The notes beneath the pieces were generated by a model, which was not told where the DNA came from, made no database searches, and was given only the letters and a program-made list of their open reading frames with translations. DNA of 64,000 bases from Mantamonas sphyraenae STR306 (Eukaryota; Protista; CRuMs). Within the stretch, counting starts at the first letter, position 1, and every line of letters starts with the position of its first letter. The position numbers were made by a program, and so were the translations under genes. The DNA lies in the NCBI GenBank assembly GCA_026936335.1, contig JAPMXV010000001.1, forward strand, positions 377,343 to 441,342. The letters run 5' to 3'. This document shows positions 21,501-64,000 of this stretch, one piece after another.

Positions 21501-21694
21501 CATCTTGATCAAAGAGCTGGCCACGCATCAAATCCAGCATGTGCGCGTCGACGTCGTTCAGGTCCAGCTCTCCCTGTAATTCCAGCTGAGCAAGGGCACG
21601 CGCTCCTGGATCATCGTCGGCTTCACGATCCTCCTCGTCCAAGTCACCTTCCTCCTCGTCCTCATCATCGTGCTCATCTTCATCTTCATCGTCG

Positions 21695-21738
<44 letters not shown>

Positions 21739-23775: not shown

Positions 23776-24831
23776 TGGAGGTGTACTCGCGAGGCAAAAC
23801 GTTTGCCTCGACCAGGGCATCGTAGATGGTGCCCAGGGACGGTGCATACCAGCGTGGCACGCTATGGTCGTCCCATGTGAGGGCATCCTTGTACGAGTCG
23901 ACACCCGAGCCGACCAAGAGCCCGTCGACGCCACAGGAGCGACCAAACTCAATGTCGTGATCCTTGTCGCCGACCATAAGGGTTTTGGACGGCTCCATGG
24001 CAAATCTGTGGGATGGGGGCGGGAGGAGTGGCAGGTGTAAGGTGGGGTCAGGCCAAGTTGGTGAACGACGTGCTGCCAAGAGATGTGAGCGACGCACTTA
24101 TCGAGGATGTGCTCCATCATGAACGGAGTGGGTTTGCCAATGGTGGCAAAGGTGCGCGGGGCAAAGGCACACTCCATGGATGCGACGATGCTACCTCCGC
24201 CGGGAAGCAGGTAGTCGCCGGCTGGGTAGGTGTTGTCGCGGTTGGTACAGAGGAGCAGGAGATCGCGGCCTTTCTCCTGGGCCTTTTGCAGAGCCAGGAG
24301 GGCGTAAGAGGACTTGAAATAGGAAAAATAGCGGTCAAAGCCGATGACAACGACGCCAATGTCCTCGTCAATGGGCTGGTCGAGCAGTTCGTTGGGCCCA
24401 GCGCCGTACTGCTCTTTGTGGTCTTCGCCTCCAACGACGACATAGCCAGCGGCTTCGAGTTCATCGACGAGACCCTGTTGACCCACGACATAGACCTTGA
24501 GAGAAGTGTCGACGCCGTGGGCATGGAGATAGGCGCCGACGGCATAGGAGCTGGTAAACACTTGATCGACGTCAGCGTCCATGCCCTGAGCGAGGATTTT
24601 GTCGAGACAGGTAGCACGAGAGCGAGTGCTGTTGTTTGTGGCAAAGGCGACAGTTTTGCCTGCGCTGGCGAGGTAGTTGACAAGCGCGGCGGCGCCGGGG
24701 ATGGGTTCGCTGCCACGCCACAGGACGCCGTCGCAGTCAAAGACAAAGTGGTCGTAGGCGTCGAGAAAGTCAAGGACAGCCTTTGTGTTGGAGGCGTCGA
24801 GGACGGTGATGTCTTGGGTGGTGAGAGACAT
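23768..24831 (-). CDS. PGP: Phosphoglycolate/pyridoxal phosphatase, HAD subfamily IIA (2 exons)
   Basis: FVFDCDGVLWRG, ATNNSTRSR, VVIGFD, CTNRD, PGGGS, IGKPTP, then after the 24006-24097 intron TLMVGDKDHDIEFG. Confidence 0.9.
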
Positions 24832-28872: not shown

Positions 28873-29028
28873 GTGCAAAGTCTCAATGGCGCTGTGCGGA
28901 GACGGGAAACTGGGAGGGAGGGAGGAGGAGCGTGTGTTGCAATGGGTCGGAAAGGTTCTCGAGGACCGCGCCGTCGAAACAAAAGCAATCCCTGCCCAAG
29001 AGCCTCTGATATTTATTTGGCAAAAGAG

Positions 29029-47376: not shown

Positions 47377-50300
47377 ATGACGACCACGAGTGAGTTTTCA
47401 TCGTCGCTCGGTGACGATGACATCTTTGCGTGGATGGAGGCGGCCGAGGCAGCCGAGCAGCAGATGCTGGAAGCATCGCAGCGGTCGGATCGCTCACCGA
47501 AGCGAATGCTAGAGGAGGGGGAGGAGGCATCGCATGTGCAGCAGGATGTGAAGCGGACACGCGTGTGCTCGGAGGACTCTGAAACGAGCGTGCCTGTGGC
47601 ATGGTCAAACCGCAGTATGAGCAGTGAAGAGATGACGAGCGCACGCAGCAGCTCGAGTTCGAGGTGAGCGATTCCCGAAAAACATTCTTTTCGTGTGTTT
47701 TTTGGCGGGAAGGCGGCGGGAACGGGCAGCGCTAACACCGACAGAAACAGCAGCAGCGCTGAGCAAGAAACAAGGGACCAAGGAGGGATGCCGCACATGG
47801 GCAACGATGACTTGGCGTTGCTGAACGCGAAGCTGAAGGAATACTACGGATACGCAAAAGTGCGATCGTTTCAGCGGAACGCAATCGCGTGTGTGCTGAG
47901 TGGGCGCGACAGCTTTGTGCTGATGGCCACGGGAGCAGGCAAGTCGCTGTGTTTCCAGCTGCCGCACATGGTGTCTGGCAAGATCACGCTCGTGGTGTCG
48001 CCTCTGATCTCGCTGATGGCCGATCAGGTGAACGCACTCGAGGAAAACGGGATCCGTGCATGCTCGCTTGGCTCGACGACGCCGCTGGAGACGTTGCGAG
48101 GCGCAGAAAGGGGCGAGTACGACCTGGTGTACCTGACGCCGGAAAAGGTGAGCGTTTGGACGCAGGGCCTAAAGTCGATGCACGCGCAGCGGGAAATCGG
48201 GCTGATTGCCATCGACGAGGCACACTGTGTGTCGGAGTGGGGCCACGACTTTCGTCCAGAGTACAGGCAGCTTGCAGCTGTGCGTGAACATTTGCCAGGA
48301 GTGCCGATGATGGCGCTGACGGCGACGGCGACGCCGAGGGTGGGCGAAGACATCATCCGCAACCTACAGCTGGCCAATGTGTGGGTGGAACGGTCTTCGT
48401 TCAATCGCAGCAACCTGTTTTACGAGGTGCGGCGCAAAGCAAGCGGGGCAAATCAAGTGTACAACTCGCTTGCGTTTATGCTGCCACGCAGGGACGGTGG
48501 GGACTCGCTGGTGGTGGGTACGCACTCGCCGTACTTCAAGGCGTTTGCAGGGACGCAACTGAGCCTGTTGACGGGCGTGTCTGTGGTGTACTGCAGCACG
48601 CAAAGAACGACCGAGGCCGTGGCAAACATGCTGAGCAACAACGGTCTGCGTGCACGTGCGTACCACGCGGGGCTGCCTCTGTCGGAACGAGAGGAGGTGC
48701 ACAAGGCGTTCATGAACGATGAGCTGGACGCGCTGGTGGCGACGACTGCGTTTGGGATGGGCATCGACAAGGGAGACATCCGGCGCGTGGTGCACTACGG
48801 TCTGCCCACGAGCGTGGAAGAATACTTCCAGCAGACAGGGAGGGCCGGGCGTGACGGACTGCCTGCAGAGTGCATCCTTGTGGCCGGGGACGGAGACGCA
48901 CTCACGGCGGCGCGTGTGATTGAAAAGTACAACCCCAACTCGACGGGGCACCTGATGAGCTTGCTGGTGGTGATGAAGCAGTACCTGCACACGCGCAAGT
49001 GCAGGCGGGCGATGATTCTGGAGTACTTTGGAGAGGAAGGCCAATGCGAGAGCGCGAGTGCGTTGGCAGGGCAGGCGCCGGAAAACAACTGCGCAGGGTG
49101 CGACAACTGCTTGCGTGAGATGCGGCTGCCTGGTACGTCTGTGCGTGGCTCTGGTGTGCGCAACGTGGGCCAGGAGGCGTATGTGCTTTTGGCCACGGTG
49201 GTGCAGATGAACGAACACTTTGGTCTGTCGCTGGTGGTGGACGTGTTGCGCGGGTCGCGGAGCAAGAGGGTGCTGCAGTACGACATGGACGAGAAGCCCA
49301 TGTACGGAAAGGGCAGCCGGTTCACAAAGAACTGGTGGAAGAGCCTTGCGCATCTGCTGTGCGATGAGGGATACCTGGAGGAAGTGAGCAAGGACAAGTT
49401 TACCGTGTGGATGTGCTCGTCCAAGGGCCGTGCGTTCCTGGACAAGAACAGGTACTATGAGCGGGGCTCGGAGCAGTATCGGCGGCAGTACGACCACGTG
49501 GGTACACTGGAACTGCCGCTGAACAAGGTGCTGCTGATGGAGCACGACCGCGTGCATCGATACCGATCACCGACGCAGCACGGAAGCAAGGAGGTACTGG
49601 AGACGCCTGCGTTCCGTGTGGAGGGCAGTGAAGACACGAGGCAGGGGGCTGGGCGAGCGCTGCAGGAGGATGAGCGGGTTCTGTTTCGCAAGCTGCTCAA
49701 GGTGCGCACGGAGGAGGCGGCCAAGGCCAACGTGGCAGGAATGAGTGTGATGGACACGCACACACTGCAGCTGCTTGCGATGCAGCGGCCTGTGGACAGG
49801 GAGCACATGTTGGGTGTGGAGGGCGTGGGTGTGGTGAAGCTGGAAAAGTACGGGGCAGCGTTCTGCGAGGCGATCGCAGCGTTTGCGGAGGAGCACAACA
49901 TGAGCACGAACGTGAGCAGCGAGGCGCTGGAGGCGCAGAGCGAGGCAAACACGCAGTTGCTACGCAACCTGGGCAGCAGGTTGGACGGGAGCGTGACGGC
50001 ACCGAGGATGACGCCTGTTCGGGAAGAGGCGATGTCGCTGCTGAGACACACGCAACTGGGTGCGGAAGAGATGGCACAGCAGCGTGGAGTGCAGACGCAA
50101 ACGCTGCTCGGGTATCTGAGCGACGGATTCCTTGCGCTTCCAAACGGCAAGGAGCTGATGATGGAGCACTGGGAAAGGCTGCAGGTGCGGCAAGAGGACT
50201 TTGTGCGCGTGGCAAACGCAGCCAAGGCGTTCAAGACGCAGCACGGCCTGGAGTCGTACAGGGAGGTGCGTTTGGGTGCGCTGAAGCAAACGATCGGGGA

Positions 50301-50511
50301 CGACGGCGTGGGGTTTGGTCTGATGCGGATTGTGCTGGTGGCGCTGGAACTGGGAGTGAATGGAGGGGAAGAGGAAGTGGAGGTGGAGGATGCCGAGGAC
50401 ACGTTGATTCGGGAGCTGCGGGAGGAGGTTGCGCGAAAGGACGCGCTGATTGCGGACCAGCTGGCACAGTTGCAGGAGCTGCGACAACAGCTGGAGGGGC
50501 GGGGCAGGTAG
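47377..50511 (+). CDS. RecQ family DNA helicase (WRN-helicase-like: DEAH, RQC, HRDC, C-terminal HTH), 2 exons
   Basis: MATGAGKSLCFQ, AIDEAHCVSEWGHDFRPEY, ALTATAT, ATTAFGMGIDKGDIR, QQTGRAGRDG, CRRAMILEYFGE...CDNC, HRDC. Intron 47664-47744 with a GCTAAC branch site. Confidence 0.95.
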
Positions 50512-51672
50512 TGCAGGATCATTCTTGTGTGTGCGCTGGCGCTTGATGTCCGAGGAGGTGGACGCGGAAAGAGTGCGCTTGCGTGGGCCGGTTCGAATCG
50601 ACTGGAGGGGGGCGGCCGAGGCGTCGTAGACAGAGCGAATGAAAAAGTGGCGGTCGCCAAACATACGAAGACCAGCGAATTTGTACAGGGGCGCGTCGTG
50701 TGCGGAAAAGCCCGGATGGAGGGTGTCTGCGGCAGTGGATTGGAGGAAACGCGGGCGCTCGGAGCCCAAAGTGTTGCGTAGGCCACAGACAAGGCCAGAA
50801 AAGGTGGCTCGGATCTCGTCAATGAGACGGTCGTTGAGAAGGGAGGCAATGGTTGCGCCACCGGCGGCGACGTCGACAAAGCGCACGTTGTGGGTGCCGC
50901 GAAGGTGCTGGAGAATCCAGGGTAGAGAGAGGCGGTCTGTGCGGGCGTCGTCGGGCTGGGCAAGGACGATGGAGAGGTTGAAGGTGTCGCGAAGGACAGC
51001 GTCGAGGGTGTCGTCGTCAGCGTGGAGGGGCAGGTCTTGGGAGTCGAGGTGGGCGTCGAGGTGGGCGAGCAGAGTGCTGCGGCCTTGTTCGGAGGTGTAG
51101 ACGACTGCGGGGAGGTCTGGTCCGAGGACAGGGTGTTCGGGAGGCAGGTTGCCGGAGTAGGTGACGACGGCTTGGAGAGGCGGGTCGGTGGAGCGCGTTT
51201 GGGAGCGGTGCTCCACGAGATCGTCGTCTTGGGGCGCGTAGCGAGCACCAGGCTCGAGGCGCAGCTGGCCGCCACTGAGAAGGACGGCGTCGGCAAGGGC
51301 CCAACCAAAGTTGAGGAGGCGCCAGTCTGCAGCAGAGCCTGCCTCGCCGTCAGGGACGTGTGCGAGGGCGATGTGTTTCGAGTCGCTCGCGCCTTTGTCT
51401 AGGAAGGAGGTGATGCCGTCTGCGGGGGGGAAGGGGGGTGGTTAGGGTGGGGGGGGGAACAAGGGAAGGAGGGGGGAGGGGAGAGGGGGGTGATTACCGA
51501 GGGAGGAGACAGAGTTGCTCCAGATGTAGGGGCGGGTTTCAGGGACGGTGACGTGGTCGAGGGAGTAGAACTCGCACATGTCTGCAAGGGAGATGCGACC
51601 CGCGTCGTCTGTGGTAAAGTCGCCGAGGCGTGCGATGGGGGTTGACACGGCGGAGGAGGAGGAGGAGGTCAT
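49960..51672 (-). CDS. RibD C-terminal (pyrimidine reductase/DHFR-fold) domain protein (2 exons); C-terminus uncertain
   Basis: Spliced RPYIWSNSVSSL|DGITSF, ADAVLLSGGQLRLEP, PLQAVVTYSGNLP, VDVAAGGATIASLLNDRLIDEIRAT. The frame stays open antisense into RecQ until 49960. Confidence 0.75.
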
Positions 51673-51702
51673 GTGTGGGTTGGCGGACTGCGCGCCAGCC
51701 AA

Positions 51703-52554
51703 ATGGAACATGTGGAGCTGGTGGGGAGGCTGGACGAACGTGGGTGGTCCGAAATGAGAGATCGGATGCAGGAGATGGTGTCGCTGAGGTCACTGGTGTG
51801 GCTGGACAGCGGGTGCGACGAAGAAAGGGTAAGGGAGTTGGTGGAGCTGGTCAAGAAGCACAAAGGAGTCGTCAGCGTGGCACTGCACTCTCATCAATGC
51901 GGAGACGTTGGCCTGCTGGGAAGTTTGTACGAGGCAACTCAGGAAAACCTGCGTGGAATGGACGAGCTGGAGGCCGGGATTGAGTGTGGAGACGTGCAGG
52001 AGGTCAGTCGGTGTTTGCGGCATGGCACGCCAGTGCAAAGGCGGGTGTTGCGGAAATGTGTGATGGCAAATGATGGGGTTGTGTTGAATGTGCTGTTGGA
52101 GCACGGGGGCGATCCGGAGGAGGCTGTGGAGAAGGCGGCAGGGTTTGGGCGGCCGGCACTGGTGTTTGTGGCCCTGTGGCACGGTGCTACGCCGCCGGCG
52201 GGTGTGCGATATGGAGGGCAGCGGTTGGTTTGCGAGATGTTGGTGGAGGGGTGGAAGAGGCAGGATCTGAGAGAGTTGTTTGAATGCGAGGAAAGGGTCG
52301 CTTTTGAGGGGATTCAGGGGTGCATGATGCCGGTACAGGTACAGTGGAGTGAGGATGTACATTGGATGTGGAGTGGACACATGGATAGAGCGGTGGAGGT
52401 GGCGTTGGTGATGAACGGGGAGGAGAGGGAGGCGATGTTTGCGTGTGGAGGGATGGAGGAGTATGTGGAGGAGGGTGGGTGGGATGGGTGGGTGACACTG
52501 CCGGATGAGGTGATGGAGAGGGTGATTGGGTGGATGGGGAAGGGATGGTGGTGA
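51703..52554 (+). CDS. Hypothetical protein with degenerate ankyrin-like repeats and a C-terminal F-box/SOCS-like motif
   Basis: GDVQEVSRCLRHG, VLNVLLEHGGDP, AAGFGRPALVFVALWHGA; ends WVTLPDEVMERVIGWM. Confidence 0.55.
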   Translation: MEHVELVGRLDERGWSEMRDRMQEMVSLRSLVWLDSGCDEERVRELVELVKKHKGVVSVALHSHQCGDVGLLGSLYEATQENLRGMDELEAGIECGDVQEVSRCLRHGTPVQRRVLRKCVMANDGVVLNVLLEHGGDPEEAVEKAAGFGRPALVFVALWHGATPPAGVRYGGQRLVCEMLVEGWKRQDLRELFECEERVAFEGIQGCMMPVQVQWSEDVHWMWSGHMDRAVEVALVMNGEEREAMFACGGMEEYVEEGGWDGWVTLPDEVMERVIGWMGKGWW

Positions 52555-52816
52555 CGGCGAGTGGTGGAGGGGGGAAGAGGTGAGGGAGGAAGTGCAATTT
52601 TCCCGACTCGAAGTGGAGCAAAATGAAGTTGGATCCGTTTTATGGATGGGTGATCGACCCCTGGCGCAAGGAGACAAGTGGAAGGCCGTGTGCAAAAGCG
52701 CGACTCAAGCGATGAGGAGAACGTGAGGACAAGACTTTTCCACACGTGCGATGGTGAAACAGTGGGCATCCCAGGGTGCAGTGGAGTGGTCGTGGGGAGT
52801 GTGGGAATGAAGGGGT

Positions 52817-55763
52817 TCATTCGAGGCGCTGGCGTTTGGAGGAGGAGGAGGAGGAGGAGGAAGGGTCTTTGCGCTTGGGGAGGGTGAAGGAGGGGATGGG
52901 GTAGGCGTTGACGAGTGCGGTGGTGGTGGGACGGGTGTTGATGTGGGGTGTAATGCGGTCGATGAGTGTGTGGAGGAGGGTGTGCAGTGTGGCGTCGCTG
53001 GGTTTGGGGGTGTCGAGCCAGGCGATCTTGAGGGAAAGGGAGGTGACACCACGGGTGAGGGTGTTGCTGATGGCAAGTTGTACCTGCTGGTAGGTGAAGT
53101 GTGGCCTGAGGAGGCGGACAAAGAAGGCCAGGTCGACAGGCGGCACGCCAACGTTGCCAAAGCGCCAGGATGATGTGTCGCAGCAGGGAGTTCAAGCTGC
53201 CGTTGTTGATCAGATCGCGCAGTGCCTGGAGCTCGTGTGTGTGCTGATGGCGAGGGTGCTTGGCTGCGCGTGCCTTCATGTGTGCCAGCAGCGTCTTGAA
53301 CTCCCGCGCCGTGCAGCTGCCACGCTCGTCGCTGTTGGCGCTGCTCCAGCCACTGCGCACAGAATCGGGATGCCACTTGTCCACCTTGTTGGTGGTGAAG
53401 TGCTGGTCGTAGTCGCATTGCGTCCAGTGTGGGTCGCTGTCGTTGTCAGCAGGGCGTCGTGCTTCCTGCAGCCACACCTGGGTCTGCTCGTGTTCCTTCC
53501 AGGTGCTGGGATGGGTCCTGTTGCCGAGTGTGTCCATCTCTGTCATGAGCAGGTGGAGAGGAGGGCGTAGTTGGGGTTGCCGTGGTCGTGTGGCTCCTCC
53601 AGCCAGCACACCTTCAACCCAGCCTTTGACACACCCATGGCCAGACCAGCGTTGTTGATGGCATGGCTGCACGCTTCTTGATCCATGCCACGTCCGAGCA
53701 GGATGAGGCAGAGTGCCATGTCGCCCTGGGAGAGGGGAATGTTGCCCAGAGCGAGCTGAATCTGTCGGACCAGCGTGGTCGAGGTGCCATGGCAGACCAC
53801 AACACGCGCCTGCAGGGTCATGAGGTCGGGGATGTCGTCGATGGGATGCTCGTTGGCCAGGGTGTGCAAGTGCTTCAGCAGTGCCGTGTGCTCCTTCTTG
53901 TTGCTGTGCATGCGCTCGCTCTTGCGCCAGTTTGTCCAACCACTGCGCACAACGCCATCTGGCAGTCCCTCCTCCACGGCCATCAACTCCTCCTCTGTGG
54001 GCTCGGGCAGAACAAGCTTGGGTATGCGGAGGGTGTTGACGAGTGCGGTGGTGGTGGGGCGGGTGGTGATGTGGGGTGCGATGCGGTCGATGAGGGTGTG
54101 CAGGAGGGTGTGCAGTGTGGCGTCGCTGGGTTGGGGTTGTCAAGCCAGGCGATCTTGAGGGAGAGGGAGGTGACACCCCGAGCGAGGGTGGCGCTGACGG
54201 CATCGGCAACGTGGTGGTAGGTGAGGTGTGGCCTGAGAAGACGGACAAAGAAGGCCAGGTCGACAGGCGGCACGCCAACGTTGCCTAGCGCCAGGATGAT
54301 GTGTCGCACAAGGGACTGCTTGCTGCCGTTGTTGATCAGCTCACGCAATGCATGGTGCTCGTGTGAGTACTGATGGCGAGGGCACTTGGCTGCGCGTGCC
54401 TGCATGTGTGCCAACAGCGTTTCGAACTCCCGCGCCGTGCAGCTGCCACGCTCGTCGCTGTTGGCTTTGCTCCAGCCACTGCGCACAGACTCAGGATGCC
54501 ACTTGTCCACCTTGGTTGTGATGAGGTGATGGTCGTAGTCGCATTGTGTCCAGTGTGGGTCGCTGTTGTTGTCAGCAGGGCGTCGTGCTTTCTGCAGCCA
54601 CAGCTGGGTCTGCTGGTGCTCCTTCCAGGTCGTGGGATGGCGTCTGTCGCCAAGAGTGTCCATCTCTGTCATGAGCAGGTGGAGGAGGGCGTAGTTGGGG
54701 TCGCTGTGGTCGTGTGGCTCCTCCAGCCAGCACACCTTCAACCCAGCCTCTGTCACACCCACGGCCAGACCAGCGTCACGGATGGCGAATCTGCACGCCT
54801 GTTGATCCATGTCACGGCTGAGAAGGGTGAGGCAGAAGGCCATGTCACCCTGGGAGAGGGGAATGTTGCCCAGAGCGAGCAGAATCTGTCGGACCAGCGT
54901 GGTCGTGGTGCCATGGCAGACCACAACACGCACCTGCAGGGTCACGAGGTCGGGGATGTTGTCGATGGGATGCTCGTTGGCCAGGGTGTGCATGTGGTTC
55001 AGCAGTGCCGTGTGCTCCTTTTTGTTTCTGTGGCTGCGCTCGTCGCTGAGTCCCCCTGTCCACCCTTTGCGCACAACTCCATCTGGCAACTTGCTCGTCT
55101 TGTCACGCCTGCTTTCTTCCGTGCACCGTTGTCTCCGTTCTTGGCCCCCCTTGCCCGTGTGCTCGACGTTCCTGTCTCCGTGCCACTGCCAGTCGTGACC
55201 CTGTGCCCGTGCTTTCCATTCCATGTGCTGCTTTGTGTCCCAGAGCGACATCCGCTGCGGCCCCTCTGTCGTGTGCGGCGACTGCTTCGTTTGGGCAGCG
55301 ACTGTTCATCCATGTTCTCCTGCTCCATGTCGTCTGTGTCGTCATCGCTATTGTCCCCAGGTATGGAATCCCCATCTATAGTGGTTGTTGACGTTGTGGT
55401 CGTGGCTGTGTGGTCTTGCGAGACGGGCTGAGCCCAGGCCTCGTCGCTCGCCTCGACATACCGGAGCACGTCATCCTGAGTCATCCAATCGGTGTCGTGG
55501 AAGCGGTAGAAGCGCCCTGCGGGTTGTGCGGTGTCCACATACAGCGTTCCAGGCTCGTTGAAGCGTTCGGAGGAAAGGTTAGACATATTGCGGCGCGCAG
55601 CAGGCGCAGGCGGCGGGGGAGGAGTGGTGTTGGATGTGTGCCGGCGGTTCGGATAGTGTAACAGAACAGGAACCCACACAAAGGACTGCATGGAGTTCTG
55701 TGGAGACGCGTAGCCGGGTGGGGAAAGATGATGCCGAGGAATGTAGCCTCGTTGCAGGTTCAT
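52817..55763 (-). pseudogene. Subtelomeric repeat-domain gene, copy 1 (four apparent indels; divergent N-terminus)
   Basis: Collinear with copy 3 from ~55340 to the stop at 52817. Frame breaks at ~55104, ~54133, ~53558 and ~53160, some in homopolymers (may be assembly errors). Start approximate. Confidence 0.7.
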
Positions 55764-56112
55764 TGGACCGAAACTGAGTGGAACACGATAGGGGGTAGGT
55801 TGGGATGGGCGTGTAATGATGCATGTGCGTGAAGGTTGGAGGATGGTTAGCATAGCGTGGACGGTTGGGCGCAACGAGGGACCTTTGAAGGCGGATGGAG
55901 CGGCAAGTGTGTGCAAAGGACGGTTGACGGAACCGAGATGCGAAACATGGAAGGGTACTTACACGGAGTAGGGATGGTATGAGCGGAAGGGGGAACTGGT
56001 GTTGCTGTGAATGGTGAGAAGTTGTTGTTGGAAACGTTGGTTGGGCAGGTGAGGGTGAGTGGAATTTCGCACACGCCACTGAGGACAAAGGTGCGTGTGA
56101 TACGTGTGAGTG

Positions 56113-59100
56113 TTACTCTAGGCGTTGGCGTTTGGAGGAGGAGGAGGAGGAGGAGGAGGAAGGGTCTTTGCGCTTGGGCAGGGTGAAGGAAGGGATGGGG
56201 TAGGCGTTGACGAGTGCGATGGTAGTGGGACGGGTGGTGATGTGGGGTGTGATGCGGTCGATGAGGGTGTGGAGGAGGGTGTGCAGTGTGGCGTCGCTGC
56301 GTTGGGGTTTGTCGAGCCAGGCGATCTTGAGGGAGAGTGTGGTGACGCCGCGGGTGAGGATGTTGCTGATGGCACCCACGACTTGCTGGTAGTTGAGGTG
56401 TGGCCTGAGGAGGCGGACAAAGAAGGCCAGGTCGACAGGCGGCACGCCAACGTTGCCCAGCGCAAGGATGACGTGTCGCAGCAGGGACAGCAGGCTGCCG
56501 TTGTTGATCAGCTCACGCAGTGCATGGTGCTCGTGTGCATGCTGATGGCGAGGTTGATTGGCTGCGCGTGCCTTCATGTGTGCCAGCAGCGTCTGGAACT
56601 CTCGCGCCGTGCAGCTACCACGCTCGTCGCTGAGAGAGTGCGCTGCCCAGCCACTGCGCACAGACTCGGGATGCCACTTGTCCACCTTGGTGGTGGTGAG
56701 GTGGTGATCGTAGTCGCATTGTGTCCAGTGCTGGTCGCTGTCGTTGTCAACAGGGCGTCGTGCTTTCTGCAGCCGCAGCTGGGTCTGCTTGTGCTCCTTC
56801 CAGGAGGTGGGATGGGGCCTGTCGCCGAGAGTGTCCATCTCTGTCATGATAAGGTGGAGGAGGGCGTAGTTGGGGTCGCCGTGGTCGTGTGGCTCCTCCA
56901 GCCAGCACACCTTCAACCCAGTCTTTGTCACACCTGTGGCCAGACCAGCGTGGTTGATGGTAACGCTGCACGCCTGATGATCCACATTACGGCCGAGGAG
57001 GATGAGGCAGAAGGACATGTCGCCCTGGGAGAGGGGAATGTTGCCCAGAGCGAGCTGAATCTGTCGGACCAGCGTGCGCAGGGTGCCATGGCAGACCACA
57101 ACACGCGCCTGCAGGGTCATGAGGTCGGAGATGTCGTCGATGCGGTGCTCGTTGGCCAGGGTGTGCATGTGGTTCAGCAGTGCCGTGTGCTCCTTCTTGT
57201 TGCTGTGCATGCGCTCGCTCTTGCGCCAGTGACGTCCAGCCACTGCGCACAACGCCATCTGGCAGTCCCTCCTCCACGGCCATCAACTCCTCCTCTGTGG
57301 GCTCGGGCAGAACAAGCTCAGCGATGTCTATGGCGTTGACTGCGTCAACGGTGGTGGGACGTGTGGTGATGTGGGGTTTGATGCGGTCGATGAGGGTGTG
57401 GAGGAGGGTGTGCAGTGTGGCGTCGCTGGGTTTGGGGTTGTCCAGCCAGGCGATCTTGAGGGAGAGGGATGTGACGCCGCGAGTGAGGGTGTTGCTGATG
57501 GCACCGTTCACATGCTCGTAGGTGAGGTGTGGCCGGAGGAGGCGGACAAAGAAGGCCAGGTCGACAGGGGGGACGCCAACGTTGCCCAGCGCCAGGATGA
57601 TGTGTCGCACAAGGGACAGCTGGCTACCGGTGTTGATCAGCTCACGCAGTGCATGGTGCTCGTCTGTGTGCTCATGGCGAGGGTACTTGGCTGCGCGTGC
57701 CTTCATGTGTGCCAGCAGCGTCTGGAACTCCCGTGCCGTGCAGCTGCCACGCTCGTCGCATGTTGCAGCACCGGTCCAGCCACTGCGCACGGACTCAGGG
57801 CGCCATTGTTCCTCGGTGGTGGTGAGGTGGTGGTCGTAGTCGCATTGTGTCCAGTGTGGGTCGCTGTCGTTATCAGCAGGGCGTCGTGCTTTCTGCAGCC
57901 ACAGCTGGGTCTGCTTGTGCTCCTTCCAGGTGGTGGGATGGGGTATGTCTCCGAGAGTGTCCATCTCTGTCATGAGCAGGTGGAGGAGGGCGTAGTTGGG
58001 GTCGCCGTGGTCGTGTGGTTCCTCCAGCCAGCACACCTTCAACCCAGCCTCTGTCACACCCATGGCCAGACCAGCGTCTTTGATGGAATGGCTGCACGCC
58101 TGTTGATCCAACTCACGGCCGAGAAGGGTGAGGCAGAAGGCCATGTCGCCCTGGGAGAGGGGAATGTTGCCCAGAGCGAGCTGAATCTGTCGGACCAGCG
58201 TCAACTGGGCGCCGTGGCAGACCACAACACGCGCCTGCAGGACCATGAGATCGGAGATGTTGTCTATGGGATGCTCGTTGGCCAGGGTGTGCATGTGTCT
58301 CAGCAGTGCCGTGTGCTCCTTCTTGTTGCTGTGGCTGCGCTCGTCACTGATTCCCGCTGTCCACCCTTTGCGCGCAACACCATCTGGCAACTTGTTCGTC
58401 TTGTCCACCCCTGCGTTCTTCCGTGCGCCGTTGTCTCCGTTCTTGGCCCTCCCTGCCCGTGTGCTCGACGTTCCTGTCTCTGTGCCACTGCCAGGCGTGA
58501 CCCTGACCCTGCGCTGACCGCTGCCTTTCATATTTTGTGGACCAGTCTGTCGGCTAATGTGGCCTCTGCGTCGTCGTGTGCGGACTCTTCTTGTGCACCT
58601 CGGCTGCCATTCGTCCGTGTTCTCCTGCTCCATGTCGTCTGTGTCGTCGTCGCTGTCTTCTTGCGGCATGTACTCCTCATCCATGGCATCACCAGCATCT
58701 GCAAAGCTAAGTGTGCCCTGAGTTTCCGACTCGTCATCCGCGTGCTGCTGGGTTGCATGGTTTGCCTCGCCGTCTTCATCGTACGCCTCCATCCCTGAGC
58801 TGGTCATCCACTCTGAGTTGCTGGAGATTGACCGTGGTGCACGGTGGCCAAAGTTCAGGAACATCAGGTCCTCCACGTCGCCGGTGTCATGTGTGGCTGT
58901 GTCTTGGTCTGCGTCGTCGTCGTCGCTGTCTCCGGTCTGCCGTGTGCCCTGCTGGGTGGAGGACGACGATGTGGTGGTGGATGTGGTCCGTGTGATGCCG
59001 ACAAAAGCAGGGCTGATGCGTTTGGGGACACTGTTGTGGTTTGTGGTGGGTTGAGCAGGCGGAGGGTGCAACGGAGGCTGAGCGAAGTGCACCTGGGCGG

Positions 59101-59296
59101 TTTGTCGCGGCTGAGGAGGCGGCGGAGGAGGGTAGGGGTAGTATGGGTGGCCCTGATGAGCATATGCGTGTTGCTGCTGGGGATGGGTGTTGACAGGGAC
59201 CCACATGATGGGTGGTTGTGGGTTCTGGTACGGGTTTTGTACGCCAGAAACGGGCAGCATGTTCGGAAACGGCTGGGCAGCCACGGGAGGGACCAT
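56113..59296 (-). pseudogene. Subtelomeric repeat-domain gene, copy 2 (one apparent +1 indel at ~57232)
   Basis: MVPPVAAQPFPNML...KRQRLE*, full-length paralog of copy 3 split between ORFs 56987-59797 and 56113-57258. Confidence 0.7.
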
Positions 59297-59990
59297 GTAC
59301 GCGTAGCTGTGGGGGGAGACGGGGAGGGGCAGGGCGGAGTGGGACTGGTGAGCGGAAGGCGGAACGGACGCCGTCAGAGCAGAAGCGGGGGTGAAGGGAG
59401 GCTGGAACGAGCAGGGAGGGAAAAGATGGAAGGAGGGAGGCAGACGCGGAAACTGGCCACGGGGAGGGCAGTGACAGGGGAGAGGGAATCGGAGAAGAGC
59501 GGAGAAGGCAGCGACGGTGGTAATGGGGATGTGCAGATGCAGGGAAGGAGGGCAGGGAAGCGACGCAGGCATGGAGGAGGCAAGCAAGCGGGAGAAGCGG
59601 GCAGTCAGAAAACGGAGTGGAAGGCAGAACGCACGCTGTGTAGGTGTTGGGTGTGTGTTGTTGCTTGGGAGTGCTTGAGTAGTCTTTGTCCATGATTGTG
59701 GTGGTGGTAGTGGAGTGTAAGTGGATTGTATTGGACTGGTGGAGGGTGTTGTGGGTGTTGGTGACGTTTTGGTTGAAGGCGGATGGGTGGGGTGCACAGG
59801 TGTACGAGGCTAAAGAGACGGGGTTGGTGATGAACGGGGAGGAGGGGGAGGCAATGTTTGGGTGTGGTAGGATGGAGGAGTATGAACCGACTGCACAGTG
59901 GATGACACTGCCGGAGGAGGAGATGGAGAGGGTGGTTGGGTGGGTGGGGAGGGAGGGTGAGTGGGAAGGGTGTGGGAATGAAAGGGTGGT

Positions 59991-62900
59991 TCATTCGAGG
60001 CGTTGGCGTTTGGAGGAGGAGGAGGAGGAGGAGGAGGAGGAGGAGGAGGAGGAGGAGGAGGAGGAAGGGTCTTTGCGCTTGGGCAGGGTGAAGGAGGGGA
60101 TGGGGTAGGCGTCGACGAGTGCAGGGGTGGTGGGACGGGTGGTGATGTGGGGTGTGATGCGGTCGAGGAGGGTGTGCAGGAGGGTGTGCAGTGTGGCGTC
60201 GTTGCGTTTGGGCTTGTCGAGCCAGGCGATCTTGAGGGAGAGGGAGGTGACACCGCGGGTGAGGGTGTCGCTGATGGCAGGTTGCAACCGCTTGTAGGTG
60301 AGTTGTGGCCTGAGGAGGCGGACAAAGAAGGCCAGGTCAACAGGCGGCACGCCCACGTTGCCCAGCGCCAGGATGATGTGTCGCAGCAGGGACATCTTGC
60401 TGCCGTTGTTGATCAGCTCACGCAGTGCATGGTGCTCGTGTGTGTGCTGATGGCGAGGGTGCTTGGCTGCGCGTGTCTTCATGTGTGCCAGCAGCGTCTG
60501 GAACTCCCGCGCCGTGCAGCTGCCTCGCTCGTCTCCGGTCTTGCTCCAGCCACTGCGCACAGACACGGGATGCCACTTTTCCACCTTGGTGGTGGTGAGA
60601 TGGTGGTCGTAGTCGCCTTGTGTCCAGTGTGGGTCGCCGTCGTTGTCAGCAGGGCGTCGTTCTTCCTGCAGCCGCAGCTGGGTCTGCTCGTGCTCCTTCC
60701 AGGTGGTGGGATGGGGCCTGTCGCCGAGAGTGTCCATCTCAATCATGATGAGGTGGAGGAGGGCGTAGTTGGGGTCGCCGTGGTCATGTGGCTCATCCAG
60801 CCAGCACACCTTCAACCCCGCCTTTGTCACACCCATGGCCAGACCAGCGTCGTGGATGGCGAGTCTGCAGACCTGTTGATCCATATCATGGCCGAGAAGG
60901 GTGAGGCAGAAGGCCATGTCACCCTGTGAGAGGGGAATGTTGCCCAGAGCGAGCTGAATCTGTCGGATCAGCGTGGTCGTGGTGCCATGACAGACCACAA
61001 CACGCGCCTGCAGGGTCATGAGGTCGAGGATGTTGTCGATGGGATGCTCGTTGGCCAGAGTGTGCATGTACTTCAGCAGTGCCGTGTGCTCCTTCTTGTT
61101 GCTGTGCATGCGCTCGCTCTTGCGCCAGTTTGTCCAGCCACTGCGCACAACGCCATCTGGCAGTCCATCCTCCACGGCCAGCATCTCCTCTTCTGTGGGC
61201 TCAGGAAGAAGAAGCTTGGGGATGTCGAGGGTGTTGACAGCGTCGGCGGTGGTGGGGCGGGTGGTAATGTGGGGTGTAATGCGGTCGATGAGGGTGTGGA
61301 GGAGGGTGTGCAGCGTGGCGTCGCTGGGTTGGGGGTTGTCAAGCCAGGCGATCTTGAGAGAGAGGGAGGTGACACCGCGGGTGAGGGTGTCGCTGATGGC
61401 AGGTTGCACCTGCTTGTAGGTGAGTCGTGGCCGGAGGAGGCGGACAAAGAAGGCCAGGTCGACAGGCGGCACGCCAACGTTGCCCAGCGCCAGGATGATG
61501 TGTCGCAGCAGGGACAGCAGGCTGCCGTTGTTGACCAGCTCACGCAGTGCATGGTTCTCGTGTGTGTGTTGATGGCGAGGGTGCTTGGCTGCGCGTGCCT
61601 TCATGTGTGCCAGCAGCGTCTGGAACTCCCGCGCCGTGCAGCTGCCACGCTCGTCTGCGGTGTGGCTCCAGCCACTGCGCACAGACTCAGGATGCCAATT
61701 ATCCACCGTGGTGGTGGCGAGGTGGTGGTCGTAGTCGCATTGAGTCCAGTGTGGGTCGCTGTCGTTGTCAGCAGGGCGTCGTGCTTCCTGCAGCCGCAGC
61801 TGGGTCTGCCGGTGCTCCTTCCAGGTGGTGGGATGGGACTTGTTGCCGAAAGTGTCCATCTCAGTCATGATCAGGTGGAGGAGGGCGTAGTTGGGGTCGC
61901 CATGGTCGTGTGGCTCCTCCAGCCAGCACACCTTCAACTCAGCCTTTGTCACACCCACGGCCAGACCAGCGTATCGGATGGCATCGCTGGTCCCTATGTG
62001 ATCCATGTCATGGCCCAGAAGGATGAGGCAGAAGGCCATGTCACCCTGGGAGAGGGGAATGTTGCCCAAACAGAGCTGAATCTGTCGAACCAGCGTGTTC
62101 AAGGTGCCATGGCAGACCACAACACGCGCCTGCAGGGTTCTGAGGTCGGGGATGTTGTCAATGGGATGATCGTTGGCCAGGGTGTGCATGTGGTTCAGCA
62201 GTGCCGTGTGCTCCTTCTGGTTGCTGCGGCTGCGCTCGTCGCTGGGTCCCTTTGTCCACCCTTTGCGCACAACGCCATCTGGCAACTTGTTCGTCTTGTC
62301 CACGACTGATTTCTTCCGTGCGCCGTTGTCTCCGTTCTTGGCCCTCCTTGCCCGTGTGCTCGACGTTCCTGTCTCTGTGCCACTGCCAGCCGTGGCTCTG
62401 ATTCTGCGCTGTCCGCTGCCTTTCGTCTGTTGTGGACCAGTGCGACGGCTGGTCTGGCCTCTGCGACGTTGTGTGCAGACTCTACTGGTGCGCCTCGGCT
62501 GCCACTCGTCCGTGTCCTCCTGCTCCGTGTCGTCTGCGTCGTCGCTGTCGTCTTGCAGCATGTACTCCTCATCCATGGCATCACCAGTCTCTGCAATGAA
62601 GAGTGCACCCTGAGTATCCAACTCGTCGTCCACGTGCTGCTGTGTTGCCTCGTTTGCCTCGCCGTATTCTTCGTACGCCTCCATCCATGAGCTGGTCATC
62701 CACTCTGAGTTGCTGGAGGTTGTTCGTGGTTCTCGGTGGCCGAAGTTCAGGAACATCAGATCCTCCACGTCGCCAGTGTCATGTGTGTGTGTGTCCTGGT
62801 CTGCGTCGTCGTCGTCGCTGTCTCCAGTCTGCTGTGTGACCTGGTGGGAGGACGACGACGATGTGGTGGTGGATGTGGTCCGTGTGATGCCCACAAAGGC

Positions 62901-63173
62901 AGGACTGATGCGTTTTGGGACGCGGTTGTGGTTTGTGGTGGGTTGAGCAGGCGGAGGGTGCGACGGAGGCTGGGCGTTTTGTCGCGGTTGAGGAGGCGGG
63001 GGCGGAGGGTAGGCGTAGTATGGGTGGCCCTGATGAGCATATGCGTGGTGCTGCTGAGGGTGGGTGGTGACAGGGATCCAGATGATGGGTGGTTGTGGGT
63101 GCTGGTACGGGTTTTGTACGCCAGAGACGGGCAGCATGTTCGGAAACGGCTGGGCAGCCATGGGAGGGACCAT
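59991..63173 (-). CDS. Subtelomeric repeat-domain gene, copy 3 (intact, 1060 aa): P/Q-rich + acidic N-terminus, 2x ~374-aa domains, NLS-like tail; putative HTH DNA-binding protein
   Basis: Uninterrupted ORF. LPDGVVR(K/S)GW starts each domain (62285 and 61163, period 1122 nt); ends PKRKDP(S)18KRQRLE. No family recognised; function is inference. Confidence 0.85.
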   Translation of the reverse strand: MVPPMAAQPFPNMLPVSGVQNPYQHPQPPIIWIPVTTHPQQHHAYAHQGHPYYAYPPPPPPQPRQNAQPPSHPPPAQPTTNHNRVPKRISPAFVGITRTTSTTTSSSSSHQVTQQTGDSDDDDADQDTHTHDTGDVEDLMFLNFGHREPRTTSSNSEWMTSSWMEAYEEYGEANEATQQHVDDELDTQGALFIAETGDAMDEEYMLQDDSDDADDTEQEDTDEWQPRRTSRVCTQRRRGQTSRRTGPQQTKGSGQRRIRATAGSGTETGTSSTRARRAKNGDNGARKKSVVDKTNKLPDGVVRKGWTKGPSDERSRSNQKEHTALLNHMHTLANDHPIDNIPDLRTLQARVVVCHGTLNTLVRQIQLCLGNIPLSQGDMAFCLILLGHDMDHIGTSDAIRYAGLAVGVTKAELKVCWLEEPHDHGDPNYALLHLIMTEMDTFGNKSHPTTWKEHRQTQLRLQEARRPADNDSDPHWTQCDYDHHLATTTVDNWHPESVRSGWSHTADERGSCTAREFQTLLAHMKARAAKHPRHQHTHENHALRELVNNGSLLSLLRHIILALGNVGVPPVDLAFFVRLLRPRLTYKQVQPAISDTLTRGVTSLSLKIAWLDNPQPSDATLHTLLHTLIDRITPHITTRPTTADAVNTLDIPKLLLPEPTEEEMLAVEDGLPDGVVRSGWTNWRKSERMHSNKKEHTALLKYMHTLANEHPIDNILDLMTLQARVVVCHGTTTTLIRQIQLALGNIPLSQGDMAFCLTLLGHDMDQQVCRLAIHDAGLAMGVTKAGLKVCWLDEPHDHGDPNYALLHLIMIEMDTLGDRPHPTTWKEHEQTQLRLQEERRPADNDGDPHWTQGDYDHHLTTTKVEKWHPVSVRSGWSKTGDERGSCTAREFQTLLAHMKTRAAKHPRHQHTHEHHALRELINNGSKMSLLRHIILALGNVGVPPVDLAFFVRLLRPQLTYKRLQPAISDTLTRGVTSLSLKIAWLDKPKRNDATLHTLLHTLLDRITPHITTRPTTPALVDAYPIPSFTLPKRKDPSSSSSSSSSSSSSSSSSSKRQRLE

Positions 63174-63839
63174 GTACCCGTAGCTGTTGGGAGAAGCGGA
63201 GGGGCAGGGTGGGGTGGGAACGGTGAGTGGAAGGCGGACTGGACGCTGTCAGAGCAGAAGCGGGGTGAAGGGAGGCTGGAACGAGCAGAGAGGGAAAACG
63301 GAGGAGATTGGCAGACGGGAAAATGGCAACGGGGAGGGCAGTGACAGGGGAGAGGGGATCGGAGAAGAGCGGAAAAGGCAGCAGGGGTGGTGATGGGGAA
63401 GTGGAGATGCAGGGGAGGAGTGCAGGGAAGCGACGGAGGCATGGAGGAGGCAAGGAAGCGGGGGAAGCGGGCAGTCAGAAAACGGAGTGGAAGGCAGAAC
63501 GCACGCTGGGTAGGTGTTGGGTGTGTGTTGTTGCTTCGGAGTGCTTGAGTAGTCTTTGTCCATGGTGGTGGTGGTGGTACTGGGATGTATGCGGATTGTG
63601 TTGGACAGGTGGAGGGTGTTGTGGGTGTTGGTGATACTTCGGTTGAAGGCGGATGGGCAGTGCTGACTGCACGGCGTTGCAGGACCACGGCCACTCACCA
63701 GCAACATTCCCACTCCCACCCATTGCCCACTGCCTCATGTCACCACCCTACTCAGCCACTGTGTCAGCGAACGCAATCACAACTCACCTGACCTAGACCT
63801 GACTCATCACATCAAGTTTCAACCCACCCAAGATAAGGG

Positions 63840-64000
63840 TTAGGGTTAGCGTTAGCGTTAGGGTTAGGGTTAGGGTTAGGGTTAGGGTTAGGGTTAGGGT
63901 TAGGGTTAGGGTTAGGGTTAGGGTTAGGGTTAGGGTTAGGGTTAGGGTTAGGGTTAGGGTTAGGGTTAGGGTTAGGTTAGGGTTAGGGTTAGGGTTAGGT
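63840..64000 (+). repeat. Telomeric repeat (TTAGGG)n, right chromosome end
   Basis: Tandem TTAGGG to the end of the window, G-strand on +. Proximal variants TAAGGG and 2x TTAGCG, plus one TTAGG. Confidence 0.98.

What the first reader, a model, noticed from the sequence alone, without database searches (positions are those of the whole stretch)
52817..63173. Candidate new system: telomere-adjacent array of modular HTH-like proteins with diversifying recognition helices
Seen: three tandem ~1060-aa paralogs directly beside the telomere, each with a P/Q-rich and acidic disordered N-terminus, basic tracts, four related ~185-aa modules and a PKRK..KRQR tail. Established patterns: module 1 LSQGDMAFCLxLLGxxMDQQACxxAIxxAGL has the helix-G-turn-helix-GL spacing of Tc1/IS630/Clr5- and POU-specific-type HTHs. 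Module 2 PVDLAFFVRLLRPHLTYxxVxxAISN resembles the PGLT..V/LT..QV turn plus recognition helix of GARP-Myb and homeodomains. RGSCTAREFQTLL recalls Myb helix 1. Inference: a nuclear multi-module DNA reader whose specificity is being re-tuned, conceptually like PRDM9/KRAB-ZNF/TALE arrays but on a different fold. Possible roles include anti-transposon or antiviral defence, drive, or telomere regulation. I do not recognise the family.
Basis: partly seen in the sequence, partly recalled or inferred. Interest (0 to 1): 0.9.

Follow-up and report, generated by a model that had tools for sequence, protein, structure and literature searches.

The report
Orphan subtelomeric four-module gene array
The last three genes before a chromosome end of a mantamonad-like protist are tandem copies (one intact, two broken) of a protein family with no detectable relatives, built of four related all-helical modules; the DNA-reading role proposed for it remains untested.

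Summary
The sequence features are real. Next to a TTAGGG telomere lie three head-to-tail copies of a gene on the minus strand. Each encodes a P/Q-rich, then acidic, then basic N-terminus, four homologous modules in the order A-B-A-B, and a KRK...poly-Ser...KRQR tail.

Only copy 1 (59991-63173) is intact. Copy 2 has one frameshift. Copy 3 has at least four frameshifts and a different N-terminal third.

The minus-strand frame is coding (dN/dS 0.54 between copies 1 and 2, and no stops only in that frame). The window fits Mantamonas sphyraenae or a close relative.

The family is an orphan. It has no hit in Pfam, NCBIfam, PHROGs, PDB sequences, 1.84 billion representative proteins or JGI metagenome contigs. 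The better AlphaFold model (pLDDT 61) is a seven-helix domain with no significant Foldseek match, so an HTH fold is neither shown nor excluded.

Three surface-like patches vary at the same positions in both module types, with omega about 1.0-1.5 against 0.4-0.7 elsewhere. This suggests diversification but does not prove it.

Best reading: a lineage-specific subtelomeric gene family that turns over by segmental duplication, gene conversion and decay, encoding a probably nuclear multi-module binding protein. DNA reading is plausible but untested.

The parts
63836..64000 (+). Telomere: TTAGGG repeats running to the end of the window. Two TTAGCG variants sit at the inner edge and there is one short unit near 63975.
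63658..63835 (.). Unique junction sequence between the array and the telomere repeats. It is not repeated elsewhere in the window.
63174..63657 (-). Upstream region of copy 1, pyrimidine-rich on the coding strand. It is repeated upstream of copy 2 (59297-59787) at p-distance 0.097.
59991..63173 (-). Copy 1: the only intact gene, 1060 aa. It has a P/Q-rich, then acidic, then basic N-terminus, modules A1-B1-A2-B2, and a KRK-polySer-KRQR tail.
61698..62288 (-). Copy 1 module A1 (residues 296-492).
61167..61697 (-). Copy 1 module B1 (residues 493-669). Residues 1-150 of this module gave the AlphaFold model with pLDDT 61 and seven helices.
60576..61166 (-). Copy 1 module A2 (residues 670-866).
60084..60575 (-). 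Copy 1 module B2 (residues 867-1030).
61971..62012 (-). Variable patch P3 in module A1 (residues 388-401). It covers the loop and the first turns of the helix that follows the conserved LL-G motif.
61389..61427 (-). Variable patch P3 in module B1 (residues 583-595), at the same alignment columns as in A1. In the model it maps to the loop plus the N-terminal half of helix 94-104.
59820..59963 (+). Spacer fragment that copies 52401-52553, the 3' end of the plus-strand ORF 51673-52554 (80% identity). It marks a DNA-level segmental duplication.
56113..59296 (-). Copy 2: same start and stop as copy 1, with one +1 frameshift near 57232-57243 at the start of module A2. The stop-free pieces are 57245-59296 and 56116-57243.
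52817..55916 (-). Copy 3: a pseudogene. Its N-terminal ~260 codons are divergent. Frameshifts lie near 55104 (-1), 54136 (-1, in a C run), 53558 (+2) and 53160 (+1). It ends in the same KRQRLE stop.
51673..52554 (+). Convergent neighbour ORF (293 aa, no family match). Its 3' end was carried into the array spacer.

Best explanation
SHOWN
- This is a real, protein-coding, lineage-specific gene family at the extreme end of a chromosome of a Mantamonas-like protist. The species is most probably M. sphyraenae.
- An ancestral gene that already carried the four modules (A-B-A-B) was copied at the DNA level into a head-to-tail array.
- The copies then exchanged segments by gene conversion.
- The two copies farther from the telomere have decayed. 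One intact gene is left 660 bp from the telomere repeats.

INFERRED
- The product is a nuclear protein. A low-complexity P/Q-rich, acidic and basic N-terminus acts as an interaction, activation or targeting region. NLS-like basic clusters carry the protein into the nucleus.
- The four ~150-aa all-helical modules each act as a binding unit. Three exposed patches differ between modules and paralogs and set what is bound.
- The most likely ligand is nucleic acid or chromatin, possibly subtelomeric. A protein ligand is almost as likely.

The confidence given below is for the inferred mechanism. For the shown parts (real orphan subtelomeric family evolving by duplication, conversion and decay) I would put about 0.85.
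For: - Coding and constrained: dN/dS between copies 1 and 2 is 0.54 overall and 0.24 in the P/Q N-terminus. Conserved cores have pN/pS 0-0.2. The sense frame is the only frame without stops.
- A and B modules keep a common pattern at 33% identity (E=2e-16), so protein-level selection has lasted a long time.
- Codon GC3 is 0.76, like neighbouring host genes at 0.68-0.81.
- Duplication history: the unit-1 halves of all copies cluster together against the unit-2 halves (support 1.0). The nearest neighbour changes along the sequence, which indicates conversion.
- The spacer carries a piece of the neighbour gene's 3' end. There are no poly(A) tracts or telomere repeats between copies.
- Decay increases away from the telomere.
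- Nuclear or binding hints: charge blocks of -35 and +17, and the KRK...KRQR tail.
- Both AlphaFold runs predict all-helical modules.
- Variable patches coincide between module types, with omega 1.0-1.5 against 0.37-0.71 elsewhere.
- Taxon: the neighbouring thimet oligopeptidase is 72% identical to Mantamonas plastica. The window's GC content, TTAGGG end and mono-exonic genes match the M. sphyraenae genome description (PMC10492846).
Against: - No similarity to any DNA-binding family, by sequence or by fold.
- The models have low to moderate confidence (pLDDT 41 and 61).
- Omega in the hot patches is not significantly above 1, and synonymous divergence is also raised there. Relaxed constraint on loops explains the data as well as diversifying selection does.
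- Two of three copies are broken and overall dN/dS is high (0.54-0.70), so the family may be under weak selection.
- There is no expression, localisation or binding data.
- No homologue was found even among Mantamonas plastica transcriptome proteins, which are part of the searched collection.
Confidence: 0.3

Rival explanations
1. It is the protein of an unclassified selfish repeat: a subtelomeric repeat element or a non-autonomous transposon or retroelement ORF1/Gag-like gene. It multiplies at chromosome ends and has no host function.
For: - The copies are in head-to-tail order with their 5' ends toward the telomere. Established knowledge says telomeric retroelements such as HeT-A/TART sit this way.
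- The newest-looking copy is the outermost and the older ones are decayed.
- The family is an orphan.
- The M. sphyraenae paper reports 12% repeats, mostly unclassified, masked before gene prediction. That would explain why no such protein is in the databases.
Against: - No reverse transcriptase, endonuclease, transposase or zinc-knuckle match.
- No inverted repeats in 51000-64000.
- No poly(A) tracts or telomere repeats at copy junctions.
- The spacer contains a fragment of the neighbouring host ORF, which indicates segmental duplication.
- Codon usage is host-like.
- No other copy in the remaining 52 kb of the window.
Confidence: 0.2
2. It is a protein-protein interaction scaffold or adaptor, cytoplasmic or nuclear. 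The helical modules bind proteins, not nucleic acids. The variable patches reflect changing partners or simply loose constraint.
For: - An all-helical seven-helix module with no HTH-type structural match.
- Loops between the candidate HTH helices are 5-6 residues in the model, which is longer than a classical tight turn.
- Long disordered, low-complexity regions typical of hub proteins.
Against: - The strongly basic tract next to the modules and the NLS-like tail fit a nucleic-acid or nuclear role at least as well.
- No match to any known protein-binding helical repeat either.
Confidence: 0.25
3. The family is dying. All three copies are non-functional or nearly so, and copy 1 is merely the one that has not yet been hit.
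For: - Copies 2 and 3 are frameshifted.
- Overall pN/pS is 0.55-0.70.
- No homologue in the related M. plastica transcriptome proteins.
Against: - dN/dS between copies 1 and 2 is clearly below 1 (0.54), and 0.24 in the N-terminus.
- Core segments show pN/pS 0-0.2 across twelve modules.
- Copy 1 has a 3183-nt open frame. Start and stop are conserved in all three copies.
Confidence: 0.15
4. Part of what is seen is an assembly artefact. The frameshifts in copies 2 and 3, or the copy number itself, may be errors of long-read assembly and polishing in a repeated chromosome end.
For: - The published assembly used PacBio reads with FALCON, Racon and Pilon.
- One copy 3 frameshift lies in a C run and one lies in a CT repeat.
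- Repeated ends are hard to polish.
Against: - The copy 2 frameshift and the copy 3 frameshift at 53160 are not in homopolymers.
- Copies differ by 10-14% in nucleotide sequence, enough for reads to be placed uniquely.
- Long neighbouring ORFs of up to 2102 aa are intact.
Confidence: 0.1

Closest known systems
Lineage-specific subtelomeric multigene families that evolve by duplication, gene conversion and decay. Examples are yeast Y' elements, fungal telomere-linked helicase genes, Trypanosoma brucei RHS genes and Plasmodium PHIST (all from established knowledge; not tested for homology).
   Same: - Position directly next to the telomere, with tandem paralogs.
- A mix of intact and frameshifted copies.
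- A mosaic pattern typical of gene conversion.
- Like PHIST, the repeated unit is a ~150-aa all-helical domain with conserved tryptophans.
   Different: - No sequence or fold similarity to any of them.
- No helicase or RHS domain, and no signal or export motif seen.
- Presence at other chromosome ends could not be checked.
Arrays of DNA-reading modules with variable specificity residues: TALE repeats, PRDM9 and KRAB zinc-finger arrays.
   Same: - Tandem homologous modules within one protein.
- Variation concentrated in a few positions that recur in every module.
- Basic, NLS-like regions and an acidic region.
   Different: - Only four modules of ~180 aa, in two old types (33% identity), rather than many near-identical short repeats.
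- A different, unidentified fold.
- Omega in the variable patches is only about 1-1.5.
- DNA binding is not shown.
Helix-turn-helix domains of the Tc1/IS630, psq/CENP-B, AraC, Myb and homeodomain kinds.
   Same: - By eye, the core has helix-Gly-loop-helix spacing.
- A stretch ending in G-V-T followed by a helix with conserved L-K-x-x-W-L resembles the helix2-turn-helix3 pattern.
- The only HTH hit is an AraC-type domain at E=0.64.
   Different: - No significant profile or fold match.
- Modelled inter-helix loops are 5-6 residues long.
- If the G-V-T register is the true HTH, the recognition helix is the conserved one and the variable patch lies in helix 2.
Telomere-targeted retrotransposons (HeT-A/TART/TAHRE, SART/TRAS).
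   Same: - Head-to-tail copies at the chromosome end, with 3' ends toward the centromere.
- The outermost copy is the least decayed.
   Different: - No RT, endonuclease or Gag zinc knuckles.
- No poly(A) tract or telomere-repeat junctions.
- The spacer contains host-gene sequence.

Membership tests
HTH DNA-binding domains (Tc1/IS630, psq/CENP-B, Myb/SANT, homeodomain, AraC) | Significant sequence-profile match to a curated HTH family | tested here: not met
   Pfam on the full protein and on 13 modules at E<=10 found no HTH family. PDB profile searches gave an AraC-type domain at E=0.64 as the best HTH hit.
HTH DNA-binding domains (Tc1/IS630, psq/CENP-B, Myb/SANT, homeodomain, AraC) | Tri-helical fold with a tight turn and an exposed recognition helix | tested here: inconclusive
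   AlphaFold gave pLDDT 41 for the A module and 61 for the B module, both all-helical. Loops between candidate helices are 5-6 residues. Foldseek gave best E=0.69 and TM<=0.34, with no HTH among the top hits.
HTH DNA-binding domains (Tc1/IS630, psq/CENP-B, Myb/SANT, homeodomain, AraC) | Sequence-specific DNA binding | not testable with these tools
   Needs EMSA, SELEX or DAP-seq.
Subtelomeric multigene family evolving by duplication, conversion and decay | Tandem paralogs directly next to telomere repeats | tested here: met
   Three copies lie between 52817 and 63173, and the telomere starts at 63836.
Subtelomeric multigene family evolving by duplication, conversion and decay | Mix of intact genes and pseudogenes, with mosaic similarity from gene conversion | tested here: met
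   Frameshift map. Tree and sliding nearest-neighbour analysis.
Subtelomeric multigene family evolving by duplication, conversion and decay | Members at several chromosome ends | not testable with these tools
   The genome is not in any searchable collection here. There was no exact or homologous protein and no metagenome match.
Telomeric non-LTR retrotransposon | Reverse transcriptase, endonuclease or Gag zinc knuckle encoded | tested here: not met
   Each unit contains only the one ORF.
Telomeric non-LTR retrotransposon | Poly(A) tract or telomere-repeat junction at the 3' end of each copy | tested here: not met
   Spacer sequences were read directly.
DNA transposon | Terminal inverted repeats and a transposase domain | tested here: not met
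   No inverted repeat of 25 nt or more in 51000-64000. No transposase match.
Diversifying reader arrays (TALE, PRDM9, KZFP-like) | Specificity positions under positive selection (omega significantly above 1) | tested here: inconclusive
   The hot columns are shared by A and B modules (rho 0.22, p=0.007). Cross-validated omega is 1.0-1.5 against 0.37-0.71 elsewhere. There are too few sequences, two copies are pseudogenes, and pS is also raised in the patch.

The most novel reading that the evidence does not exclude
The four-helical-module protein is a new kind of programmable nucleic-acid reader. Each ~150-aa module would recognise DNA or RNA through the variable face of one helix plus two neighbouring patches. 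The subtelomeric array would be a nursery in which duplication and gene conversion generate new specificities, for control of mobile elements or viruses, or for regulation of chromosome ends. It would be a functional analogue of TALE or KRAB-ZNF arrays, on an unrelated fold, in a deep-branching eukaryote.
Probability: 0.1. Interest if true: 0.8.

Novelty: new variant of a known kind. Interest (0 to 1): 0.4.

Why it matters
Mantamonads belong to CRuMs, a group near the base of Amorphea, and almost nothing is known about their chromosome ends.

If the family sits at many of the ~130 chromosome ends, it would be the main subtelomeric element of this lineage. It would also be a new protein domain with an unknown fold.

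If the modules bind nucleic acid through the variable patches, it would be an independent invention of a modular reader.

As it stands, it is a well-defined orphan family with a clear duplication, conversion and decay history and no functional evidence. Orphan families are common in poorly sampled protists.

Tried and rejected
SEARCHES THAT FOUND NOTHING USEFUL
- Pfam on the full protein gave only GemA at E=0.029, below the cut-off.
- Pfam on 13 modules, PHROGs and NCBIfam found nothing.
- PDB sequence search with the single protein and with two profiles found nothing significant.
- The word-seeded search of 5.8 billion proteins with residues 300-1030 gave no hit.
- The exact-sequence look-up showed the protein is not in the collection.
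- phmmer of the four-module region against 1.84 billion representatives gave 0 hits at E<=0.001.
- Related-locus scans failed with the module alignment, which had no stretch conserved enough. The single-protein scan of metagenome contigs gave 41 pattern matches, none confirmed.
- AlphaFold on module A gave pLDDT 41. Its Foldseek result is meaningless, with all E>3.
- Foldseek of the module B model against PDB and BFVD gave nothing significant.
- Rfam and tRNA scans of the window found nothing.
- A first global MAFFT alignment of the three units was scrambled by the internal duplication. I replaced it with tblastn and pairwise alignment.

READINGS CONSIDERED AND REJECTED
- Kinetoplastid origin. 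GC content and pyrimidine tracts suggested it, but the neighbour's best hit is Mantamonas.
- Fungal telomere-linked RecQ context. The RecQ here has full RQC and HRDC domains and its nearest relatives are algal, Paulinella and bacterial.
- Retroelement and DNA transposon (see the membership tests).
- Antisense ORFs as the real genes.
- A helix-hairpin-helix reading of the L-G-N-x-G motif. Checked by eye, the glycine spacing does not fit, and the second glycine is absent in A modules.

SAFEGUARDS
- The contig is not human.
- No toxin, effector or virus gene is involved.


Full report
WHAT THE WINDOW IS

The window ends in 27.5 TTAGGG units (63836 to the end). Its GC content is about 0.59-0.60, and it carries long uninterrupted ORFs for ordinary eukaryotic proteins. 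These include peptidase M3, MFE-2, adenylate cyclases, eIF6, a VPS13-like N-terminal region and RecQ.

The thimet oligopeptidase at 33687-35798(-) has its best hit, at 72% identity, in a EukProt protein of Mantamonas plastica. The next hits are at 54% or less, from Balamuthia, animals and chytrids.

The published description of the Mantamonas sphyraenae genome matches the window. It reports GC 59.19%, TTAGGG at both ends of 59 of 78 contigs, mostly mono-exonic genes, and about 66 small chromosomes (PMC10492846).

I take the window to be a chromosome end of M. sphyraenae or a close relative. This is an inference. It is not human. That paper also states that repeats (12% of the genome, mostly unclassified) were masked before gene prediction. 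This may explain why no protein of this array is in any collection.

CHECKING THE OBSERVATION

A self-comparison shows three head-to-tail units on the minus strand at 88-90% nucleotide identity. Each unit has an internal duplication of about 1040 nt.

- Copy 1 (59991-63173) is an intact 1060-aa ORF with an ATG start.
- Copy 2 (56113-59296) has the same start and stop. It carries one +1 frameshift near 57232-57243, at the beginning of its third module. The two pieces are otherwise stop-free.
- Copy 3 (52817 to about 55916) has uncompensated frameshifts near 55104, 54136, 53558 and 53160. Its first ~260 codons are only 39-44% identical to copy 1, although they keep the same P-rich, acidic, basic order.

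So there is one gene and two broken copies, with more damage farther from the telomere.

The composition claims hold:
- residues 1-95 have 28% P and 12% Q;
- residues 96-225 have net charge -35;
- residues 226-295 have net charge +17;
- the tail is 60% Ser between KRK and KRQR.

The four modules start at residues ~296, 493, 670 and 867. They are of two types in the order A-B-A-B. A and B are homologous (E=2e-16, 33% identity over 135 aa). They share about 25 nearly invariant positions.

No further copy or fragment exists in the other 52 kb of the window.

IS IT A GENE?

Between copies 1 and 2 the annotated frame is the only one of six without stops, and its pN/pS is 0.56. One antisense frame, whose third positions coincide with those of the sense frame, has the same ratio (0.57) but 29 stops.

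dN/dS is 0.54 overall, 0.24 in the P/Q-rich N-terminus and 0.37-0.75 in the modules. Across all twelve modules the conserved cores have pN/pS of 0-0.2. GC3 is 0.76, like the neighbouring genes.

The gene is therefore real and has been under protein-level constraint. The constraint is rather weak.

HOW THE ARRAY AROSE

In a tree of the six A-B half-genes, the first halves of all three copies group against the second halves (support 1.0). The four-module gene therefore existed before it was copied.

Along the sequence the nearest relative changes. For example, the middle of copy 1's first half is closest to its own second half, at 0.93-0.95. This is the signature of gene conversion.

The spacer between copies 1 and 2 contains an 80%-identical copy of 52401-52553, the 3' end of the convergent plus-strand ORF 51673-52554. 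There are no poly(A) tracts, no telomere repeats and no inverted repeats at the junctions.

This is DNA-level segmental duplication. It is not retroposition or cut-and-paste transposition.

WHAT THE PROTEIN IS

Every homology search was blank:
- Pfam, where only GemA appeared at E=0.029, below the cut-off;
- PHROGs and NCBIfam;
- PDB sequences, with the single protein and with two profiles;
- 5.8 billion proteins by the word-seeded search;
- 1.84 billion representatives read in full by phmmer, with 0 hits at E<=0.001;
- JGI metagenome contigs.

The searched collection includes the M. plastica transcriptome proteins. The family is therefore either very fast-evolving or restricted to a narrow lineage.

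AlphaFold with the 13-module alignment gave pLDDT 41 for module A. For module B it gave pLDDT 61 and pTM 0.56. Both are all-helical. The B model has seven helices: 22-37, 45-57, 60-70, 78-88, 94-104, 111-119 and 126-145.

Foldseek found nothing significant in PDB (best E=0.69, TM<=0.34; the top hits are a viral VP30 C-terminal domain, a TetR-type regulator and a HEPN domain) or in BFVD.

The only HTH hit is an AraC-type domain at E=0.64.

By eye I see two possible HTH registers:
- A second register has the variable helix followed by a G-V-T turn and the conserved L-K-x-x-W-L helix. In this register the recognition helix would be the conserved one.

The modelled loops are 5-6 residues long, which is longer than a classical turn. 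With models of this quality the question stays open.

IS SPECIFICITY BEING RETUNED?

Variation is concentrated in three patches:
- P1, directly after the conserved G-W;
- P2, two residues at the start of helix 60-70;
- P3, the loop plus the first turns of helix 94-104. The spacing of its variable residues (i, i+1, i+3, i+4, i+8) suggests one exposed face.

The same columns vary in A and B modules. Spearman rho is 0.22 (p=0.007) for nonsynonymous change and is not significant for synonymous change.

I defined hot columns in one module type and measured them in the other. This gives omega 1.0-1.5, against 0.37-0.71 for the remaining columns. The result fits diversifying selection on a binding surface. 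It fits unconstrained loops equally well.

Synonymous divergence is also raised in P3. Only 11-13 sequences are available, several of them from pseudogenes.

MOST LIKELY MECHANISM

Shown: this is a lineage-specific subtelomeric gene family that turns over by segmental duplication, gene conversion and decay.

Inferred (about 0.3): the product is a nuclear, multi-module binding protein. The variable patches define the ligand, and nucleic acid or chromatin is the leading candidate because of the adjacent basic tract and the NLS-like tail.

Rivals, with my estimates:
- a protein-binding scaffold (0.25);
- an unclassified selfish subtelomeric repeat (0.2);
- a dying family (0.15);
- for the frameshifts only, assembly error (0.1).

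COMPARISON AND NOVELTY

As a genomic phenomenon it resembles other subtelomeric paralog families, such as Y' elements, telomere-linked helicases, RHS and PHIST. As an idea it resembles TALE, PRDM9 and KZFP arrays. It is a member of none of them (see the membership tests).

The domain is new in the sense that nothing detectable resembles it. Orphan families are common in poorly sampled protists, and no function is shown. I therefore rate interest at 0.4.

They are listed under next steps.

Noticed in passing
window 14000-64000: The plus strand is G-rich over C for about 50 kb up to the telomere (GC skew 0.1-0.38). Third codon positions follow the DNA strand, not the gene. Minus-strand genes have C3>G3 (for example 0.61 against 0.21) and plus-strand genes have G3>C3 (for example 0.54 against 0.25). 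This points to a strand-wise mutational bias toward the chromosome end, perhaps replication-related.
   Followed up: partly
window 47695-50508 (+): A complete RecQ helicase (DEAD, Helicase_C, RecQ Zn-binding, RQC, HRDC) lies 13 kb from the chromosome end. Its nearest relatives are only 36-40% identical (the snow alga Sanguina, and Paulinella), followed by bacterial RecQ. It may be a bacterial-type or organelle-related RecQ rather than a fungal-style telomere-linked helicase.
   Followed up: partly
window 51673-52554 (+) and 59820-59963: A 293-aa plus-strand ORF with no family match converges on copy 3. Its last ~150 nt are copied, at 80% identity, into the spacer between copies 1 and 2.
   Followed up: partly
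window 63836-64000: The innermost telomere units include two TTAGCG variants, and one unit near 63975 lacks a G. The 178 nt before the repeats (63658-63835) switch to C/A-rich composition and are unique in the window. They may be a telomere-associated sequence.
   Followed up: no
window 18526-24831 (-): A single 2102-aa ORF combines a HAD-type hydrolase domain, leucine-rich repeats, BTB, BACK and MATH domains. It is either an unusual fusion protein or several genes read through.
   Followed up: no
window 62274-62400, 58379-58500, 55100-55200 (-): A block of about 25 residues just before the first module (G-S-G-T-E-T-G ... N-G-D-N-G-A-R-K-K) is nearly identical in all three copies, including the otherwise divergent copy 3. 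It coincides with the point where copy 3 regains ~90% nucleotide identity to copy 1 (62394). Copy 3 therefore looks chimeric.
   Followed up: partly
window 2785-6570 (-) and 28873-33624 (+): Two large adenylate/guanylate cyclase genes lie in the same 64 kb. The second has two catalytic-domain matches.
   Followed up: no
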